NCBI GenBank assembly: GCA_048013815.1
Contig: CM106585.1
Location: 5,146,001-5,210,000 of the forward strand
DNA: 64,000 nt
Reading direction: 5' to 3'
DNA from: Setoptus koraiensis
Lineage: Eukaryota; Animalia; Arthropoda
Shown here: in pieces, positions 28,382-37,795 of the stretch
Numbering within the stretch: the stretch's first letter is position 1
Layout of the letters: the number at the start of each line of letters is the position of its first letter
Notes under the pieces: model-generated
What the model was told of the DNA's origin: nothing
Databases searched by the model: none
What the model saw: the letters and a program-made list of their open reading frames with translations, nothing else
Position numbers and translations under genes: made by a program

Positions 28382-29342
28382 CACTGCGTGCACTTTTTCC
28401 AATGAACTTACAACGGCTTCTAAAAGAATCCGATAGGGCGGCGCTACTCAGCTCTCTGTTAGAGAATAGCGGTCGATAATGAGATCTGCAGGAACCGAAT
28501 TGCAAATGAGAAGGGTCCCCATTTGTACATAATACTATTTCAACGCTCCCTCTATTTTCCGTGGATTCTGATTGTCCAATGATTCGGCCCACTGTCGGAG
28601 TGCGCGTTGTCTGCCTTCATCTCAGGTAGTTGATGATGCAATGGATGAATAATTTAGAAAGTTTTGGCCAGACAGGGGTCTCGATCGGGCAATTTGAAGT
28701 TGAGCTGGCTTCGTATCTGAAGCCGATCTATGCTGCTTTCATCGATCAGCTGACAAAATGTCGGAGAAATCTTTGATGAGATTATCATAGATAATTTTAG
28801 AGAAAAAAAGTTCTATCTGTAACTGTCAGGTGTTTCATAAGGTGTGATGGGTAATTACCGGCATATGATTATGCTAACGACATACTTATGGCAGTAAGAT
28901 AGCGAAAGTGACAGGTGGTGAAAGGACGCTTAGACACGGAGCTAAGTGCAACTCTAGACGAATAGATTTAGTGTAATCGATATTTGATATCAGCGACTAC
29001 AAAAATAGTTTGTGAAATTACAGGTAAAACACTTCATTTTGATAGCTAATCGAGGATATGCATATATATAAATATATACACATATTTAAGACTTATTTGG
29101 GCAACATTATTAAATATAATCATTGATAATATCACTAAATATAAACGATAGTGTATGTACAGATATCTGACAGGATTTACTAATTAGGATAATTAACTAA
29201 TTTTATTAATAATCAGTCGATTTCATTATTAATAACAATTAATTAATATTATTAATAGGCGTTCTGATTAGTAATACAATATTATCATGGATCAATGATA
29301 AGTATAATAAATAATAAGCTTTAAGGTAAGTTTCTAGCTCAT

Positions 29343-30760
29343 TTAAGTCATCTGATTCGAGGGTTCACCGGTAGGTACCACGGGAGAAAATTTATCCGCA
29401 AATCGTTTTCGTTGCCGTCTATTTGTGAACCATTTTCTAATACTTCTTGTGGGAATATTTCTGCAAGAAAAAGAAAAGAAAATAATCGTTAGTTTTCATA
29501 CGAAGTGGAGATGCATGATGATGGGAAAATGGAGATGAAGGCTTGACGGCGCAGCAACAGTTGTTACATCATTGAGAGTACTTACAATTCTTCAGATATA
29601 ACATCTAGTTGCCAACGATCAGGGTGGTTGTTTTTGGCGAATGAATCTTCGAGGTACTGTTTGGCCTTTTCATTAAATAGAACAACTTTTCTTTTTCTCT
29701 CTCTAGGTACCTTCGATACTGCAGGCATGAGATCCAAAGTTTTACCGCTTCTTCTCTGTTTCTCTGCCCACCTCAACCAGTCTTTGAGCATTGGTATCAA
29801 TTGGAGGGCTCTTTCAGGTTCCATTTGTAAATTCTCAAAATGGTAGATAATGGCGTCTGTGCATGGCTGTTGACCACTTGTGAAGGCTCTTAAGCTTTGA
29901 GCGGCGCCTTTTTGGCTGAGACGGATATATTTACGGCGTTGTTTGAGTTCTTGTGCGAACTCTTGGATGATTTGTTTACTCTTTTCAGTCTCGTCATAAT
30001 CTTTCCTAATAATTGAATTGTCGTTGTGATGAGAATGGTCATGTGTCATGGAGCTAAACTCTTTGTCGTCTGCGTCATCATCATAATCGTCCTGATCATT
30101 AAGATCGTCTTGCTGAGTATCATCAAAGTCGTCCGTATCGTCGAATGAATCGATGTCGCCATCAAGTCCATCCTGGTATGATTGATTGTGATGTAAATGA
30201 TGCCGGTGTAAATTGTTTAAATGAGTTGCATGATTTGAGAGATGTTGATGCAATTGATGGTGATTGTGGCGATGCTTTGGTTCGGGAATGAGGTCTTCTT
30301 GGTGGTGAGTTTCATGAGATTCTAGATAGTCAATAACAGGGCTACCATTTGATGAGGAGGTGGTGGTATTTGTCTGTAGAGATTGTTGACGAGATCTCCT
30401 AGATTTGGTGGCTAAATTCAAACACTGTGCTGACCATGACTGATTGTTGTTGTTACTACAGTTGTTTGATAGTGGCACATCTGTTGCTGCCGATGGGTCC
30501 TGGTGAGTTTGTTTCAGATGCTTTTGTTGTTGCTCGTGCAGGAGTTGTTGCGTATGTAGCAATTGTTGTTGCTGGTGTGAATTTGGTTGATTTTGTTGTA
30601 GGACGGTGACGGCTGCTAAAGCAAAGGCCTTGAGTAGAGCTGCCTGCTCCTCAGAGAGACTGGACGAAATTAAAGCTAAATTTGCGAGGGATGAGGCCAA
30701 TTCGGTATTTTCAGTGTTGACACCGATGTTATTACTGCAAGCAGTGGCTGTCTTATCCAT
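29343..30760 (-). CDS. Divergent POU-domain transcription factor (class VI / pdm3-POU6F-like), copy A, 430 aa: exons 30760..29586 and 29460..29343
   Basis: POU-specific-like EFAQELKQRRKYIRLSQ...FENL...LIPMLKDWLRWAE; homeodomain RKRKVVLF...EEL|NIPTRSIRKWFTNRRQ completed by splicing a GTAAGT..TTGCAG intron. The P..A..L.P.L..WL..AE.....G...LM pattern fits class VI. Confidence 0.85.
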
Positions 30761-33700
30761 GCTGATTGGAATGTGCTAATATGTGTCTAGGTAACGATTC
30801 TAAAGGCTGTGCATGTTAGGTGACAGTTGATTTAAATGATTGAATCGTGTGCTTGTCTAGATATCCTCATTGTCCGGCATAATTGGTGATAAATATTTTC
30901 TAAGACAGGAGAGCACGAGGAGGTTCTAGGGGACGGCGTCGTGGACTGTAAAACACAATGGCGTAGATGAAAGAGCCGAGACAGAACAAAAACGTCTAGG
31001 GCAAAGAACACGAGTTGAGCATGGAACAAAGAAAATGAACGCAACACACAGGAAAGGGGAAGGCACGTTGTGCTAGACTTAGCGTTGCACACAACACACA
31101 CACACACACACGCACACACGCACAAACACACAGACTATTTTCTAGCGCACACACACGCACACAGAAACACACACGATAGGCAGCACGAGTGATAAAGCGA
31201 GAGCGTTAGACAACGCGCACAGAAGGCACAGCGACAGGAGAGAGCGATAGAGACAGGGAGGCACATGAGCAGGCAGTCTCTTTCCCCTGAGTGTCGCTCT
31301 TTGTTCCATCAGATACGTTCAACTCGTGTTTCTCCTCGATACAACGCGACGATGCAAAGATAGCACACAAACATTCGTTTATGCTGCACAACCCAAACTC
31401 ATATGTCTGCGTGTGTGTGTGTGTGTGTGTGCATGCTTTTGCTAACGATTGCTGTCGCTGTCGTTGCCGCCGCTGCTGCTGTTGCTTCTGCCTTCCCCCA
31501 CTGGACTTCCCTCCGAATCGAACCAACGACCAGCGCGACCAGCGAGAGCTCAAACGGGGAAGATCTGTCCCTATATCCATGTCTACATGACTGCATGCAG
31601 TTGAGTTGTGCATAGGAACACTTCATGACAGAACGCTACCATCACAACTGCCCATAGACGCCACCAGGCCTGGCGCATATTAACGTATATATCGCTCGCA
31701 AACATGAAGCCAGCGCGTCCCCTGGTCGTTATGTGATGGTGGCTTGAGTTAGCGCGCTTTGTGCTCGAATGATGTGTGCGTTCATGTCTGTACGTTAGAG
31801 TGACTCACACACACACACACACTCACACACACATACAATGGTTCATTTTGGTGGTGGACTGTTGGGGCAAATTGCAGTTTGCGCTCAACAACAACAACAA
31901 CAACAGCAACACCAGCGCAGAGCGCGGTCCAGTGTGTTGTTGCAGTGGCATAGGCAGGATTAGCAGTAGGTTGCAGCTAACATTGAATTCATTGCAGACT
32001 GCAGTCTGCAGCCTACCGACAGCAGAAGGGCCGAAGCGAACAACAACAACAACCACTGGCTACTCGCTTTTCACTCGATAGCTTCAAGGTGGGGGTCGCA
32101 AACACGAGCTCGCAGGAGCACACACACACACACACACACGCTTGCATTTACGCAGACATGCTTAGGCACAGACGCACACACACACACATTACAGTCGGAC
32201 GAGCCAAGATTTCATTTCCCTCGCTTTTCTTGCTTTGTGCTCATTTCTTCTCTGTTCATGTTTTGCACACAAAGAGACTCGGGCGCACACGCAGGGGATG
32301 TTGATTGTGCTGCTGCTGCTGCGGCGAGCATTATAGTTTGCGCTGCTCTTGTTGTTGTTGCTGCCGCTGCCGCCGCCGTATAGGTAGGCAGCCACCGGCA
32401 GCCGTGTAGCAGAGGCAGTAGTTGTCGTTGTTGCCGGTGTTGTTGTTACTGTTGTCGCTGTTGCCGGCGATGATTTGAGAATGGACAAAAACGCGCGCTT
32501 CACAGGAAGCTCGCGCTCTATCGGAGTCGCCACAGCGATATGAGCATATCCGAGAGGGGAAAATTATTGAAAACATACTGTTGCCTAATGCCAGTCTTTC
32601 ATTCATCGATATCACTGCTATTGTCGCCTAGTCCAGTTTCCAGGTTATTTCTTAATGAAGTTGCTACCTATGCGCGATTCGATTGCAACCCGAAAGAAAA
32701 AAATCGACGTCAGGGCTGCCTCTTTTTTACGACTCTACAGCTACCTGTCTCACGAGTCCTGTGAGCCTTGTGAGAAGTGCTTGCGCTGGTATAGCACAGT
32801 CGAGAGCTAACCGAAAATTGTCACTAATGATTGAAAGTAGAACAACAAGTTGTCACTTATTTTGCAATTTGCATTCGTTTGTCAGCGCGTTTGAAAAAAT
32901 TGCCCGAGTTAAATGTAATGATCGCTCTATGACTCATGCTGTACTAGTATAGTAAAAGTATATAAGTTGACCGAGAAGTTGATCTGAGAACGGGTCTCGT
33001 TGTAAACTAGACGCTTGCATACGATCTGCGAATTGACGCCTCGCCAGCAAACTAGCGACGCAAAGTCTAATCGTTTCGTCTGTCTATCAACGTTTCATTT
33101 GCTAGTGTCTCGCGCTGAACTGGAAACACAAAAGTGCGTGGCGTCCAACATGTGATATAGAAGCAATATCGGCGAGCGATTGTATAGATGCATCGCTGAT
33201 ATCACAATTTGGCCTGGCTAACAAGATGAGTCTACCCTTTGTAAGCGTATATCTTTACACATTAATGTGTTTGCCTGTTTGCGTCTTATAGTCTGCTCTG
33301 TCCTTCCTGTCTGTCTGTTTGTTTGTCTCTTTCTCTCTCGCTCTATCTGCCGAGCAGCAGCTGCCGCAGCATCTGCGCTCGCGTGGCTGCGCCAAAAGCT
33401 ACAGCGTTACACATGCCTTTCCTTAGCTTGATTTATTTCTGCAGTTGTTGTTGTTGCTGCTGTTGTTGCAGACTAGCAGCAGCAGCAGCATCAAGTTCAT
33501 TGCGCCGGCGCGCTAACGCAGATGCAGTCTGCGAGCGATGTGAGCACTATTCAAGGCTACAAGGTCAAAAACAAGTAAGCAGGCAGGCGGGCATAATGTT
33601 GAGTTGAACACATATAAATCCTCCAATATAGTGAGTTTACTGGCGAACATAGAGCAAACTAGGCACAACCTGGTTTTTGTAGAACCACTGTCCCCTTATC

Positions 33701-34847
33701 ACCTCAGACAGCAGGCTCGATATTGTAGCATTCGAGTGGTGAAATAATGCGAGCTTCCTACGAAGCGCGCGTATTTGTCCATTCTCAAATCATCGCCGGC
33801 AACAGCGACAACAGTAACAACAACACCGGCAACAACGACAACTACTGCCTCTGCTACACGGCTGCCGGTGGCTGCCTACCTATACGGCGGCGGCAGCGGC
33901 GGCAGCAACAACAACAAGAGCAGCGCAAACTATAATGCTCGCTGCAGCAGCAGCACAATCAACATCCCCTGCGTGTGCGCCCGAGTCTCTTTGTGTGCAA
34001 AACATGAACAGAGAAGAAATGAGCACAAAGCAAGAAAAGCGAGGGAAATGAAATCTTGGCTCGTCCGACTGTAATGTGTGTGTGTGTGCGTCTGTGCCTA
34101 AGCATGTCTGCGTAAATGCAAGCGTGTGTGTGTGTGTGTGTGTGCTCCTGCGAGCTCGTGTTTGCGACCCCCACCTTGAAGCTATCGAGTGAAAAGCGAG
34201 TAGCCAGTGGTTGTTGTTGTTGTTCGCTTCGGCCCTTCTGCTGTCGGTAGGCTGCAGACTGCAGTCTGCAATGAATTCAATGTTAGCTGCAACCTACTGC
34301 TAATCCTGCCTATGCCACTGCAACAACACACTGGACCGCGCTCTGCGCTGGTGTTGCTGTTGTTGTTGTTGTTGTTGTTGAGCGCAAACTGCAATTTGCC
34401 CCAACAGTCCACCACCAAAATGAACCATTGTATGTGTGTGAGTGTGTGTGTGTGTGAGTCACTCTAACGTACAGACATGAACGCACACATCATTCGAGCA
34501 CAAAGCGCGCTAACTCAAGCCACCATCACATAACGACCAGGGGACGCGCTGGCTTCATGTTTGCGAGCGATATATACGTTAATATGCGCCAGGCCTGGTG
34601 GCGTCTATGGGCAGTTGTGATGGTAGCGTTCTGTCATGAAGTGTTCCTATGCACAACTCAACTGCATGCAGTCATGTAGACATGGATATAGGGACAGATC
34701 TTCCTCGTTTGAGCTCTCGCTGGTCGCGCTGGTCGCTGGTTCGATTCGGAGGGAAGTCCAGTGGGGGAAGGCAGAAGCAACAGCAGCAGCAGCGGCGGCG
34801 GCAACGACAGCGGCAACGACAGCGACAGCAATCGTTAGCAAAAGCAT

Positions 34848-34882
<35 letters not shown>

Positions 34883-35534
34883 GACATATGAGTTTGGGTT
34901 GTGCAGCATAAACGAATGTTTGTGTGCTATCTTTGCATCGTCGCGTTGTATCGAGGAGAAACACGAGTTGAACGTATCTGATGGAACAAAGAGCGACACT
35001 CAGGGGAAAGGGACTGCCTGCTCATGTGCCTCCCTGTCTCTATCGCTCTCTCCTGACGCTGTGCCTTCTGTGCGCGTTGTCTAACGCTCTCGCTTTATCA
35101 CTCGTGCTGCCTATCGTGTGTGTTTCTGTGTGCGTGTGTGTGCGCTAGAAAATAGTCTGTGTGTTTGTGCGTGTGTGCGTGTGTGTGTGTGTGTGTTGTG
35201 TGCAACGCTAAGTCTAGCACAACGTGCCTTCCCCTTTCCTGTGTGTTGCGTTCATTTTCTTTGTTCCATGCTCAACTCGTGTTCTTTGCCCTAGACGTTT
35301 TTGTTCTGTCTCGGCTCTTTCATCTACGCCATTGTGTTTTACAGTCCACGACGCCGTCCCCTAGAACCTCCTCGTGCTCTCCTGTCTTAGAAAATATTTA
35401 TCACCAATTATGCCGGACAATGAAGAAATCTAGACCTCCCGACAGAGATCATTGTATTGTATTAATGAACTGTCACCTATAATGATAATATATAGAAACT
35501 GTTAACAATCAAGTAACTTAATTCACCTACTAGC

Positions 35535-36985
35535 ATGGATAAGACAGTCAGAGCATGTAGCAACAGTATTGGTGTCAATACAGAAAACACCGAGCTTGCA
35601 TCATCTCTTGCAAATTTAGCTTTAATTTCGTCCAGTTTAACCGAAGAGCAGGCAGCAGTATTAAAAGTTGTTGTTAATTTAGCAGCAGTTGCTGTTCTCC
35701 AACAAAACCAACCCAATTCAAATCAACAATTACCAACTCAACGAGCACACCACCAAACAACCAATTCAACATTATCGCAACAACATCAGTCCAAACTCCT
35801 ATATCAGCAACAAGAAGACTTAGTGGCGGCCACAAATGCATCATACTTAAATAATAATAGTAACAACAACAACATCAACAACAATCAGTCATGGTCAGCA
35901 CAGTGTTTGAATTTAGCCACCAAATCTAGGAGATCTCGTCAACAATCTCTACAGACAAATACCACCACCTCCTCATCAAATGGTAGCCCTGTTATTGACT
36001 ATCTAGAATCTCATGAAACTCACCACCAAGAAGACCTCATTCCCGAACCAAAGCATCGCCACAATCACCATCAATTGCATCAACATCTCTCAAATCATGC
36101 AACTCATTTAAACAATTTACACCGGCATCACTTACATCACAATCAATCATACCAGGATGGACTTGATGGCGACATCGATTCATTCGACGATACGGACGAC
36201 TTTGATGATACTCAGCAAGACGATCTTAATGATCAGGACGATTATGATGATGACGCAGACGACAAAGAGTTTAGCTCCATGACACATGACCATTCTCATC
36301 ACAACGACAATTCAATTATTAGGAAAGATTATGACGAGACTGAAAAGAGTAAACAAATCATCCAAGAGTTCGCCCAAGAACTCAAACAACGCCGTAAATA
36401 TATCCGTCTCAGCCAAAAAGGCGCCGCTCAAAGCTTAAGAGCCTTCACAAGTGGTCAACAGCCATGCACAGACGCCATTATCTACCATTTTGAGAATTTA
36501 CAAATGGAACCTGAAAGAGCCCTCCAATTGATACCAATGCTCAAAGACTGGTTGAGGTGGGCAGAGAAACAGAGAAGAAGCGGTAAAACTTTGGATCTCA
36601 TGCCTGCAGTATCGAAGGTACCTAGAGAGAGAAAAAGAAAAGTTGTTCTATTTAATGAAAAGGCCAAACAGTACCTCGAAGATTCATTCGCCAAAAACAA
36701 CCACCCTGATCGTTGGCAACTAGATGTTATATCTGAAGAATTGTAAGTACTCTCAATGATGTAACAACTGTTGCTGCGCCGTCAAGCCTTCATCTCCATT
36801 TTCCCATCATCATGCATCTCCACTTTGTATGAAAACTAACGATTATTTTCTTTTCTTTCTCTTGCAGAAATATTCCCACAAGAAGTATTAGAAAATGGTT
36901 CACAAATAGACGGCAACGAAAACGATTTGCGGATAAATTTTCTCCCGTGGTACCTACCGGTGAACCCTCTGATCAGATGACTTAA
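35535..36985 (+). CDS. Divergent POU-domain transcription factor, copy B, 441 aa: join(35535..36742,36868..36985)
   Basis: Same domains and intron as copy A; identical protein from NQSWSAQ onward except PSDQMT vs PSNQMT at the C-terminus. Confidence 0.85.
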
Positions 36986-37795
36986 ATGAGCTTGGATCTC
37001 ACCTTGTAGCTCATTTTTTTATCTTACTTATCATTGATCCATGATAACATTGTATCACTAATCACACGGCCTATTAATATGTAACTGTCGAATGTCTGTA
37101 ATTATATTATTGTCTATATATTTATTAGTATTATCAATGATTGTATTGAATAATATTGCTCAAATACGTTATATATATGTCTATATATATATATTTATAT
37201 ATATGCATATCCTTAAATAGATATCAAAATGAAATGTTTTACATGTAATCTTATAAACTATTTTTGTAGTCGCTGATATCAAATATCGAATACACTAAAT
37301 CTATTCGTCCAGAATTGCACTTAGCTCCGAGTCTAAGCCTCCTTTCGTCACCTGTCACTTTCACTATCTTACTGCCTTCGTTAGCATAATCATATACCGG
37401 TAATTACCCATCACACCTTACGAAACACCTAACAGTTACAGATAGAACTTTTTTTCTCTAAAATTATCTATGATAAGGTCATCAAAGATTTCTTCGACAT
37501 TTTGTCAGCTGATCAATGAAAGCATCATAGATCGGCTTCAGATAAGAAGCCAGCTCAACTTCAAATTGCCCGATCTACACTGCTATCTTACCAAAAGCTG
37601 TTCCACAACTAAACAACCGTTCGTGATCACAGAGTACATTTTCCGTGCTCTATGTAATCTATATGAAAAATCAGCTTGTCTAGAAGCTTTCAACATTAAT
37701 GACAATAATTCACTTGCGATAGATGTTAGTATCGGCAATCGTGTCCTCATCTTCAACAAGAATACGCTTCCATAATAATTGAAACAAAACTGTCC

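What the first reader, a model, noticed from the sequence alone, without database searches (positions are those of the whole stretch)
36350..36920. POU factor with rewritten DNA-recognition residues in both subdomains
Seen: the POU-specific recognition helix reads TDAIIYHFE instead of the near-invariant SQ(T/S)(T/A)I(C/S)RFE, so Q44, T45 and R49 become D, A and H. Homeodomain helix 3 reads IRKWFTNRRQ instead of VRVWFCNRRQ (V47 to K, C50 to T, N51 kept). The hydrophobic cores (F..ELK.RR, FE.L, L..WL..AE, WF.NRR) are intact. Established: these residues read the ATGCAAAT octamer, and Cys50 is diagnostic of POU homeodomains. Inference: a lineage-specific POU factor with a new target sequence or a non-DNA-binding role. 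The same holds for copy A (about 29408-29960).
Basis: partly seen in the sequence, partly recalled or inferred. Interest (0 to 1): 0.75.

Follow-up and report, generated by a model that had tools for sequence, protein, structure and literature searches.

The report
Divergent mite POU factor, recognition residues replaced
Two intact neighbouring genes encode a DNA-binding regulator of the POU family in which nearly every amino acid that normally reads the DNA letters has been replaced. The same replacements are kept unchanged in about twenty related compact animal genomes, so this is a conserved, undescribed POU branch that probably reads a different DNA sequence.

Summary
Both copies (B 35535-36985 on +, A 30760-29343 on -) encode a POU-specific domain (Pfam Pou 42 bits, cut-off 27) and a homeodomain split by a 125-nt GTAAGT...CAG intron. 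Helix 3 of POUs reads TDAIIYHFE, giving S43T, Q44D, T45A and R49H. Helix 3 of the homeodomain reads IRKWFTNRRQ, giving V47K and C50T, with N51, R53 and Q54 kept.

It is not decaying. Eighteen intronless relatives in gene-dense eukaryote contigs keep both helices invariant while synonymous sites are saturated (pN 0.06-0.17, pS 0.64-0.89). The N-termini of the two window copies differ at pS 0.68 and pN 0.09.

An exhaustive HMMER search and trees place the family with two other unnamed families. These also have D44 and carry K50 homeodomains. Together they form a well-supported clade outside the canonical POU classes. Its attachment (POU6, an unnamed group, or POU1-5) cannot be resolved, although profile similarity is highest to POU6/Brn-5.

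Phosphate-contact and fold residues (R20, Q27, W48, F49, N51, R53) and a strongly basic homeodomain are retained. I therefore favour a DNA-binding factor with a new target. That reading is untested, because the RNA runs gave no reads and so no test of expression.

The scan has already noted a paralogue of this clade elsewhere in the same genome. Exons were never joined.

The parts
35535..36742 (+). Copy B, exon 1 (codons 1-402 plus two bases of codon 403). It holds the N-terminal conserved motif, a low-complexity H/Q/N/D-rich region, the POU-specific domain, the linker and homeodomain positions 1-37.
   Evidence: ORF; Pfam; alignment to 17 homologues.
35535..35885 (+). Paralogue-specific N-terminal region of copy B. 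It has not been homogenised with copy A.
   Evidence: About 79% DNA identity with indels. First 64 codons: pS 0.68, pN 0.09, dN/dS about 0.05.
36357..36566 (+). POU-specific domain of copy B (residues 275-344).
   Evidence: Pfam PF00157, 42.3 bits against a cut-off of 27. Best solved relative is POU6F1/Brn-5, 3d1n.
36468..36494 (+). POUs recognition helix, TDAIIYHFE (T43 D44 A45 I46 I47 Y48 H49 F50 E51).
   Evidence: Invariant in all family members but one (F50Y in P0017). Canonical residues are S43 Q44 T/S45 R49.
36567..36629 (+). Linker of 21 residues between POUs and the homeodomain.
   Evidence: Low pLDDT at residues 86-94 of the orthologue model. The G(K/Q)Q..(M/F)M motif resembles the POU6 linker.
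36630..36742 (+). Homeodomain positions 1-37 and the first two bases of codon 38 (N-terminal arm RKRKVVLF, helices 1 and 2).
   Evidence: Register from F8/L16/F20. Pfam Homeodomain reaches 42 bits on the unsplit orthologues P0006 and P0007.
36743..36867 (.). Intron of copy B, 125 nt, phase 2, inside homeodomain codon 38. It has a GTAAGT donor, a CTAAC branch-like site and a pyrimidine tract before CAG. The in-frame TAA at 36744-36746 lies inside the donor.
   Evidence: The same intron occurs in copy A with 2 substitutions. The homologues lack it.
36868..36985 (+). Copy B exon 2: homeodomain positions 38-60, the C-terminal tail and stop TAA at 36983-36985.
   Evidence: Pfam Homeodomain positions 38-56; alignment.
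36887..36916 (+). Homeodomain recognition helix, IRKWFTNRRQ (I45 R46 K47 W48 F49 T50 N51 R52 R53 Q54).
   Evidence: Invariant in the family. Canonical POU proteins have V47 and C50.
29586..30760 (-). Copy A exon 1 (392-codon ORF). POUs lies at 29762-29971 and its helix 3 at 29834-29860.
   Evidence: Identical protein to copy B from about residue 116 of B onward.
29461..29585 (.). Copy A intron, 125 nt.
29343..29460 (-). Copy A exon 2. Homeodomain helix 3 lies at 29412-29441. One residue differs from copy B in the C-terminal tail (D to N).
28662..37596 (.). Inverted duplication holding the two head-to-head genes. The arms are about 28662-32514 and 33749-37596, with a unique centre of about 1.2 kb.
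   Evidence: arms 90-100% complementary, except the N-terminal coding island at 79%.

Best explanation
The two genes are functional paralogues. They encode a sequence-specific transcription factor of a conserved, undescribed branch of the POU class.

Shown: the protein keeps the bipartite architecture, namely a four-helix POU-specific domain, a flexible linker of about 21 residues and a three-helix homeodomain.

Shown: it keeps the residues that dock these folds on the DNA backbone. These are R20 and Q27 in POUs, and W48, F49, N51 and R53 in the homeodomain, with R46 and Q54 also kept. The homeodomain is strongly basic.

Shown: the side chains that read bases in canonical POU proteins are replaced. 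In POUs these are S43T, Q44D, T45A and R49H. In the homeodomain they are V47K and C50T, and by ungapped register R5V. The replacements are held invariant by purifying selection.

Inferred: both subdomains still contact DNA but read something other than the ATGC/AAAT halves of the octamer. Asp44 and His49 would offer a different hydrogen-bond pattern in the major groove. K47, T50 and the changed N-terminal arm would alter the homeodomain half-site.

Inferred: the two copies share one DNA-binding domain, kept identical by gene conversion. They differ in anciently diverged, constrained N-termini, which suggests different partners or regulation.
For: - Domain identity: Pfam Pou 42 bits in the window. 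On unsplit orthologues, Pou scores 45-48 bits and Homeodomain 42 bits.
- Fold: the AF2 model of orthologue P0006:152-311 has pLDDT 85 and helices 2-19, 24-34, 45-50, 56-78, then 105-117, 123-133, 137-158.
- Fold matches: the 30 best Foldseek hits are all POU/DNA complexes. Brn-5 POUs gives rmsd 1.7 A over 80 columns at 38% identity.
- Family conservation: 18 clusters keep both recognition helices unchanged.
- Selection between family members: pN 0.06-0.17 against pS 0.64-0.89 over 127 codons, dN/dS about 0.03-0.04 where dS is finite.
- Selection between copies A and B: the first 64 codons give pS 0.68, pN 0.09. The remaining 288 codons have 2 synonymous and 0 non-synonymous differences.
- Column states: D44 in all three divergent families against Q in all canonical groups. 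R20, Q27, N51 and R53 are kept everywhere. Homeodomain net charge is about +10 and POUs is not acidified.
- Published roles of the replaced residues: POUS Gln44, Thr45 and Arg49 make the base-specific hydrogen bonds (PMC5778499). POUH Arg46, Val47, Cys50, Asn51, Gln54 and Arg5 contact DNA (PMC2425483).
- Gene structure: canonical splice signals and a preserved frame in both copies.
Against: - There is no direct evidence of expression. Four poly(A)/oligo-dT RNA runs labelled as the same species as a DNA holder gave zero reads over 33100-37500. The tool rates this as no test.
- No binding data exist. An acidic residue at the start of the POUs recognition helix could equally mean that POUs no longer enters the major groove.
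- The specificity change is inferred from residue identities only. The model was made for an orthologue, not for the window protein, because the exons were not joined.
- The organism is called a mite only in an earlier, unverified scan note.
Confidence: 0.6

Rival explanations
1. The homeodomain alone binds DNA. The POU-specific domain has lost base recognition (D44 repels DNA) and now serves as a conserved protein-protein interaction or autoinhibitory module.
For: All four published POUs base-contact positions are changed, including a charge reversal in character at position 44. The two lysines of the canonical KLKP segment after helix 3 are also replaced (Q and I) in this family. The invariance of helix 3 would fit a protein interface as well as a DNA interface.
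Against: R20 and Q27 are invariant in this family and in both sister families, as in every canonical group; by general knowledge of Oct-1 complexes these residues position POUs on the phosphate backbone. POUs net charge (+1 to +4) is within the canonical range. Each sister family has its own fixed helix-3 sequence, as expected for distinct DNA targets.
Confidence: 0.22
2. It is simply the fast-evolving orthologue of POU class VI (pdm3/Brn-5) in this lineage. It does the ancestral job on co-evolved or still octamer-like sites.
For: The best solved relative by profile is POU6F1 at 71 bits, against 60 or less for Pit-1 and about 50 for Oct-1/Oct-4. The highest-scoring named canonical hits in the exhaustive search are POU6. 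Shared features are the IREFA start, the P56/A59 pattern and a similar linker. The best ML tree joins the clade to POU6 plus an unnamed group.
Against: That join has support of only 43/3. Trees joining the clade to the unnamed group grpX or to POU1-5 are equally likely (p-AU 0.51 and 0.48). The clade contains three old paralogous families, not one orthologue. Whether the genome also holds a canonical POU6 could not be checked. Normal octamer reading is unlikely with Q44, T45, R49, V47 and C50 all replaced.
Confidence: 0.12
3. The copies are non-functional, decaying duplicates, or the domain match is an artefact of low-complexity sequence.
For: No RNA reads were recovered. The Pfam score is low for a POU domain, 42 bits against 107 for a canonical POU6.
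Against: Both copies have intact ORFs and splice sites. Purifying selection is strong between the copies and across 18 homologues. The fold prediction is confident.
Confidence: 0.03

Closest known systems
POU class VI factors (human POU6F1/Brn-5, PDB 3d1n; POU6F2; Drosophila pdm3)
   Same: Same bipartite POUs-linker-homeodomain architecture. It gives the highest profile score (71 bits) and the highest structural and sequence similarity (34-38% identity, POUs rmsd 1.7 A). It shares the IREFA-type start, Q32, the P56...A59 pattern after helix 3, and a linker of similar length with a G-(Q/K)-Q...M motif.
   Different: POU6 keeps S43, Q44, S45, R49, V47 and C50. This family has T43, D44, A45, H49, K47 and T50. 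It has two extra residues before POUs helix 3 and a changed homeodomain arm. The tree does not resolve it as POU6.
Two unnamed sister families found here: INT1 (P0021-P0025, helix 3 SDNFVGHFE, homeodomain IEIFFKNRRT) and INT2 (P0028, GDNFIAQFE, WFKNRRS, plus an extra N-terminal degenerate homeodomain)
   Same: They form one supported clade with this family: 98/86* in the full tree, and they stay together in POUs-only and homeodomain-only trees. They share D44, the QK.AAQ..RA(F/Y)T segment with its insertion, the hydrophobic residues before F8, the NIP(T/S)R turn and the linker motif. INT1 occurs in the same SRA run series as a member of this family. INT2 has the architecture that scan note s1-367038 describes for another gene of this genome.
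   Different: Both have K50, not T50. INT1 has F48 instead of W48 and E46 instead of R46. The other helix-3 residues differ. Profile scores are only 91-118 bits against about 345 within the family.
Canonical octamer-binding POU factors (Oct-1, Pit-1, Oct-4, Brn-2)
   Same: Same fold and domain order. R20, Q27, F50, E51, W48, F49, N51, R53 and Q54 are conserved.
   Different: Their base-reading set (Gln44, Thr45 and Arg49; Val47, Cys50 and Arg5; PMC5778499, PMC2425483) is the set replaced here.
HNF1 (POU-like domain plus atypical homeodomain). Comparison from general knowledge only.
   Same: It is a precedent for a strongly diverged POUs-like domain tethered to a diverged homeodomain that still binds DNA, but at a non-octamer site.
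   Different: HNF1 did not appear among the sequence or fold matches above threshold. It appeared only as a low-scoring look-alike cluster (0.76). No homology closer than the POU class is claimed.

Membership tests
POU class of homeobox genes | A POU-specific domain recognised by the curated family model | tested here: met
   Pfam PF00157: 42.3 bits (copy B) and 42.2 bits (copy A) against a cut-off of 27; 45-48 bits in orthologues.
POU class of homeobox genes | A homeodomain C-terminal to POUs, joined by a short flexible linker | tested here: met
   Exon 1 and exon 2 together encode 60 homeodomain positions. Pfam Homeodomain scores 42 bits on the unsplit orthologues. The 21-residue linker has low pLDDT.
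POU class of homeobox genes | Four-helix POUs fold and three-helix homeodomain fold | tested here: met
   AF2 model of orthologue P0006:152-311, pLDDT 85. The top 30 Foldseek hits are POU/DNA complexes. The window protein itself was not folded because the exons were not joined.
POU class of homeobox genes | Recognition helix motif S-Q-(T/S)-(T/A)-I-(C/S)-R-F-E in POUs (Q44, R49) | tested here: not met
   The helix reads T-D-A-I-I-Y-H-F-E. 111 of 114 canonical hits keep the motif.
POU class of homeobox genes | Homeodomain helix 3 with V47 and the class-diagnostic C50 (RVWFCN) | tested here: not met
   The helix reads RKWFTN. All canonical hits but one have C50.
POU class of homeobox genes | Binding to octamer-type (ATGCAAAT) or related sites | not testable with these tools
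   Needs EMSA, PBM or SELEX.
POU class VI (POU6F1/POU6F2/pdm3) | Monophyly with named POU6 proteins in a tree of the POU domain | tested here: inconclusive
   The best tree joins the clade to POU6 plus grpY with support 43/3. Alternative placements are not rejected (p-AU 0.48-0.51). POU6 labels were confirmed by source names for P0041 and P0053.
POU class VI (POU6F1/POU6F2/pdm3) | Being the only POU6-like gene of the genome (orthologue replacement) | not testable with these tools
   The rest of this genome cannot be searched here. The scan's notes list other POU genes but do not give their classes.

The most novel reading that the evidence does not exclude
The family, together with its two K50-bearing sister families, is a separate, ancient POU class confined to a group of streamlined arthropod (mite) genomes. 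In it, both tethered DNA-reading modules were re-specified, and the clade then diversified into at least three distinct recognition codes. It would be a natural experiment showing that the otherwise near-frozen Q44/R49/C50 code of POU proteins can be rewritten while the bipartite architecture is kept.
Probability: 0.35. Interest if true: 0.72.

Novelty: new variant of a known kind. Interest (0 to 1): 0.58.

Why it matters
The POU recognition residues Q44, R49, C50 and N51 are constant in every canonical POU group sampled here, and they underlie octamer recognition.

A clade in which these positions are replaced and then frozen under purifying selection offers three things:
- A ready-made set of natural specificity variants for studying how tethered two-module DNA readers evolve new targets.
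- Candidate lineage-specific regulators in mites with extremely reduced genomes and body plans.
- A test case for homeobox classification: a seventh POU class, or a runaway POU6.

The pair in this window also shows gene conversion keeping the DNA-binding domain identical while selection keeps the N-termini apart.

Tried and rejected
- **Expression.** I laid four RNA runs on 33100-37500 and got zero reads in all.
- **Organism of the window and of the homologues.** The cluster look-ups return only unnamed Logan/ENA/JGI records. Searching papers for the sample accessions found nothing relevant. The Atlas look-alikes gave only generic POU and KAT2 clusters. 'Mite' therefore rests on an earlier scan note plus the intron-poor, gene-dense layout.
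- **POU class by phylogeny.** A careful ML tree and three AU tests leave it unresolved.
- **Link between the unnamed canonical group grpX and the same organisms.** Its homeodomain and the QL.P..A segment resemble this family. The sample accessions differ, so no link was found.
- **Literature.** No paper in the library prints the helix motifs or describes such a POU family. Gold et al. 2014 (PMC4245813) sampled no chelicerates.
- **Rejected: pseudogene.** Rejected on the selection statistics.
- **Rejected: chance similarity.** Rejected on the Pfam, PDB profile and fold results.
- **Weakened, not tested: swapped homeodomain as the origin of the clade's odd homeodomains.** The homeodomains of the three families group together and share motifs, but no non-POU homeodomains were in that tree.

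Full report
**1. Observation**

The window is gene-dense, intron-poor eukaryotic DNA. Its neighbours are a carboxylesterase/AChE, a class II tRNA synthetase, an AAA ATPase, a 3-hydroxyisobutyrate-dehydrogenase-like gene, menin and a PCAF/KAT2 acetyltransferase, mostly as single long ORFs.

At 35535-36742 (+) an ATG-started ORF encodes 403 codons up to a GTAAGT donor. Residues 275-344 match Pfam Pou at 42.3 bits, with a cut-off of 27. After a 125-nt intron the frame continues at 36868. The intron (36743-36867) has a CTAAC branch-like site and a pyrimidine tract before CAG. Exon 2 encodes the second half of a homeodomain and a short tail, ending at TAA 36983-36985.

The POUs recognition helix reads TDAIIYHFE (36468-36494). 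Homeodomain helix 3 reads IRKWFTNRRQ (36887-36916).

Copy A on the minus strand has the same structure and the same domain residues:
- exon 1: 30760-29586
- intron: 29585-29461
- exon 2: 29460-29343

I checked the numbering by register against the aligned Brn-5, Pit-1 and Oct-1 chains:
- POUs: S43T, Q44D, T45A, R49H, with R20, Q27, F50 and E51 kept.
- Homeodomain: V47K, C50T, with R46, W48, F49, N51, R53 and Q54 kept.
- Counting back from F8 and F20, homeodomain position 5 is Val rather than the usual minor-groove Arg. MAFFT alternatively places a one-residue insertion there, so this point is softer.

Two papers give the roles of these positions:
- POUS Gln44, Thr45 and Arg49 make the base-specific hydrogen bonds (PMC5778499).
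- POUH Arg46, Val47, Cys50, Asn51, Gln54 and Arg5, and POUS Ser43, Gln44, Thr45 and Arg49, are the contact set (PMC2425483).

**2. It is a conserved family, not a decaying copy**

A word-indexed search with the POU-homeodomain part of exon 1 found 17 proteins, 73-84% identical over that part. A profile search added one more cluster.

All come from unannotated Logan, ENA or JGI assemblies, and none carries a name. The genes I fetched are intronless. They sit in very gene-dense eukaryotic contigs without conserved synteny.

In the alignment the segment PCTDAIIYH(F/Y)ENLQ.EP and the whole IPTRSIRKWFTNRRQRKRF are invariant. A short N-terminal motif (LANLSL...) is also conserved.

Selection statistics:

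| Comparison | Codons | pN | pS | dN/dS |
|---|---|---|---|---|
| Family members, POU-homeodomain part (exon 1 only for the window) | 127 | 0.06-0.17 | 0.64-0.89 (saturated) | 0.03-0.04 where finite |
| Copy A vs B, from about 35889 to 36969 | 288 | 0 (0 changes) | 0.012 (2 changes) | - |
| Copy A vs B, first 64 cleanly aligned codons | 64 | 0.09 | 0.68 | about 0.05 |

Over 35889-36969 the two copies differ at only four bases: two synonymous in exon 1 and two in the intron.

The two genes are therefore old duplicates. Their DNA-binding part and upstream region are kept alike by gene conversion, while their N-termini stay distinct and constrained. Both copies are under selection as protein-coding genes.

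Direct expression could not be shown. Four RNA runs gave no read on 33100-37500, which the tool itself rates as no test.

**3. Fold**

I therefore folded the unsplit orthologue P0006:152-311, using the family alignment.

- The model has mean pLDDT 85. It shows four helices for POUs, a disordered linker and three helices for the homeodomain.
- The 30 best Foldseek matches in the PDB are all POU-domain/DNA complexes.
- The Brn-5 POUs domain superposes at 1.7 A over 80 columns with 38% identity.
- On the unsplit orthologues Pfam gives Pou 45-48 bits and Homeodomain 42 bits. A canonical POU6 protein gives 107 and 67 bits.

**4. Relatives and class**

A profile search of the PDB sequences ranks POU6F1/Brn-5 first at 71 bits. 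Pit-1 follows at 56-60 bits and Oct-1, Oct-4, Oct-6 and Brn-2 at about 46-51 bits.

The exhaustive HMMER search of 1.84 billion representatives gives this ladder:

| Group | Bits | Helix 3 of POUs | Homeodomain helix 3 |
|---|---|---|---|
| The family itself | about 345 | TDAIIYHFE | IRKWFTNRRQ |
| INT1 (P0021-P0025) | 110-118 | SDNFVGHFE | IEIFFKNRRT (K50) |
| INT2 (P0028) | 91 | GDNFIAQFE | WFKNRRS (K50) |
| Canonical POU proteins | 78 or less | canonical | canonical (C50) |

- INT2 also has an extra degenerate N-terminal homeodomain.
- Multi-homeodomain proteins whose scores are sums of repeats also appear high in the list.
- Among the canonical hits, the highest-scoring named group is POU6.
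- The POU6 label was confirmed by source names for two hits, from Ambystoma and Acanthaster.

A careful ML tree (76 rows, LG+C20+F+G4) shows:
- The window protein sits inside the family (100/96*).
- The family joins INT1 and INT2 (98/86*).
- This clade sits on a long branch that meets an unresolved node joining POU6+grpY, an unnamed canonical group grpX, and POU1-5.

AU tests do not distinguish the three attachments. POUs-only and homeodomain-only trees keep the three divergent families together.

Long-branch attraction is a concern. However, the families share derived characters:
- D44
- the QK.AAQ..RA(F/Y)T segment with a two-residue insertion before helix 3
- hydrophobic residues in place of R5-T6-S7
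- the NIP(T/S)R turn
- the linker motif

INT1 occurs in the same SRA run series as a member of this family. INT2 has the architecture that an earlier scan note reports for another gene 3.1 Mb away in this genome. These are therefore paralogous families within the same kind of genome.

The 'rewriting' is thus old and clade-wide, not a peculiarity of this locus.

**5. How it most likely works**

Shown:
- The architecture, fold and backbone-docking residues are kept.
- Homeodomain net charge is about +10, and POUs charge is within the canonical range.
- The base-reading residues are replaced and then frozen.

Inferred:
- The protein still binds DNA with both modules, but at a non-octamer site.
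- Each of the three families has its own fixed helix-3 sequence, which reads as three different recognition codes.

The main rival is that POUs has become a protein-interaction module and only the homeodomain reads DNA. The conserved R20 and Q27 argue against this but do not exclude it.

A second rival concerns origin rather than mechanism: a runaway POU6 orthologue. It is compatible with the similarity ranking but is not supported by the tree. It cannot be tested without the rest of the genome.

**6. Comparison and novelty**

The protein meets the architectural definition of the POU class. It fails the two sequence signatures that are otherwise near-universal:
- Q44...R49 is kept in 111 of 114 canonical hits.
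- C50 is kept in all canonical hits but one.

I found no description of such a family. The searches covered the helix motifs, mite and arachnid homeobox surveys, the POU-class phylogeny paper and the eriophyoid genome paper. The library is limited to open-access text.

I rate it a new variant of a known kind. The scan has already flagged a paralogue of this clade on other DNA of the same genome (s1-367038), and it has flagged the palindrome that holds these two copies (s1-367050, s1-367122).

**7. Limits**

- The organism is not identified by my own tests.
- Expression is unproven.
- DNA specificity is inferred.
- The whole spliced protein was never assembled, searched or folded. All searches used exon 1 and exon 2 by reference, or unsplit orthologues.

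Noticed in passing
window 28662-37596: The two POU genes lie head to head in an 8.9-kb inverted duplication. The arms are 97-100% alike over most of their length, including about 1.5 kb upstream of each ATG and the 3' 850 nt of exon 1. The first 110 or so codons are only about 79% alike, with pS 0.68. This is a sharp, selection-maintained island inside a gene-conversion tract.
   Followed up: partly
window 36743-36748 (and 29580-29585 on the minus strand): The in-frame stop TAA overlaps the GTAAGT donor. An unspliced transcript would therefore encode a 403-aa protein with POUs but without homeodomain helix 3. This is a possible truncated isoform. No RNA evidence was obtained.
   Followed up: no
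P0021-P0025, P0168-P0174 (loci L010, L012, L013): Sister family INT1: POUs helix SDNFVGHFE and a homeodomain with F48 (IFFKNRRT) and K50 at the very C-terminus. Synteny with ATG8, DNA_pol_phi, ribosomal L23 and BRE1 is conserved between two samples.
   Followed up: partly
P0028 (locus L011:521-1840): Sister family INT2: a degenerate N-terminal homeodomain, then QQFE-containing repeats, then POUs (GDNFIAQFE) and a K50 homeodomain. This matches the architecture that scan note s1-367038 reports elsewhere in this genome. It groups with the present family in full, POUs-only and homeodomain-only trees, which suggests its odd homeodomain diverged in place rather than being swapped in. No non-POU homeodomains were included, so this is not a test.
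   Followed up: partly
P0124, P0031, P0069 (hits): Unnamed proteins with unusual POU layouts. P0124 has two POU-specific domains followed by a homeodomain reading WFAFRR. P0031 and P0069 are arrays of three POU-specific domains with varied helix-3 residues and no homeodomain.
   Followed up: no
grpX, e.g. P0033, P0045, P0049, P0067 (loci L014-L016): A large unnamed group of canonical-type POU proteins (AQSTISRFE, PEEVRVWFCNKRQK) from ENA, JGI and Logan assemblies. It forms its own starred clade beside POU6 and POU1-5. Its homeodomain (K..LED.F..N..PDR) and its QL.P..A segment resemble the mite family. Its organisms were not identified.
   Followed up: partly
window 30800-35500: The shared upstream region between the two genes is GC-richer (about 0.50 against 0.40 in the genes) and full of CA/TG and other simple repeats. 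No convincing ORF was seen.
   Followed up: no
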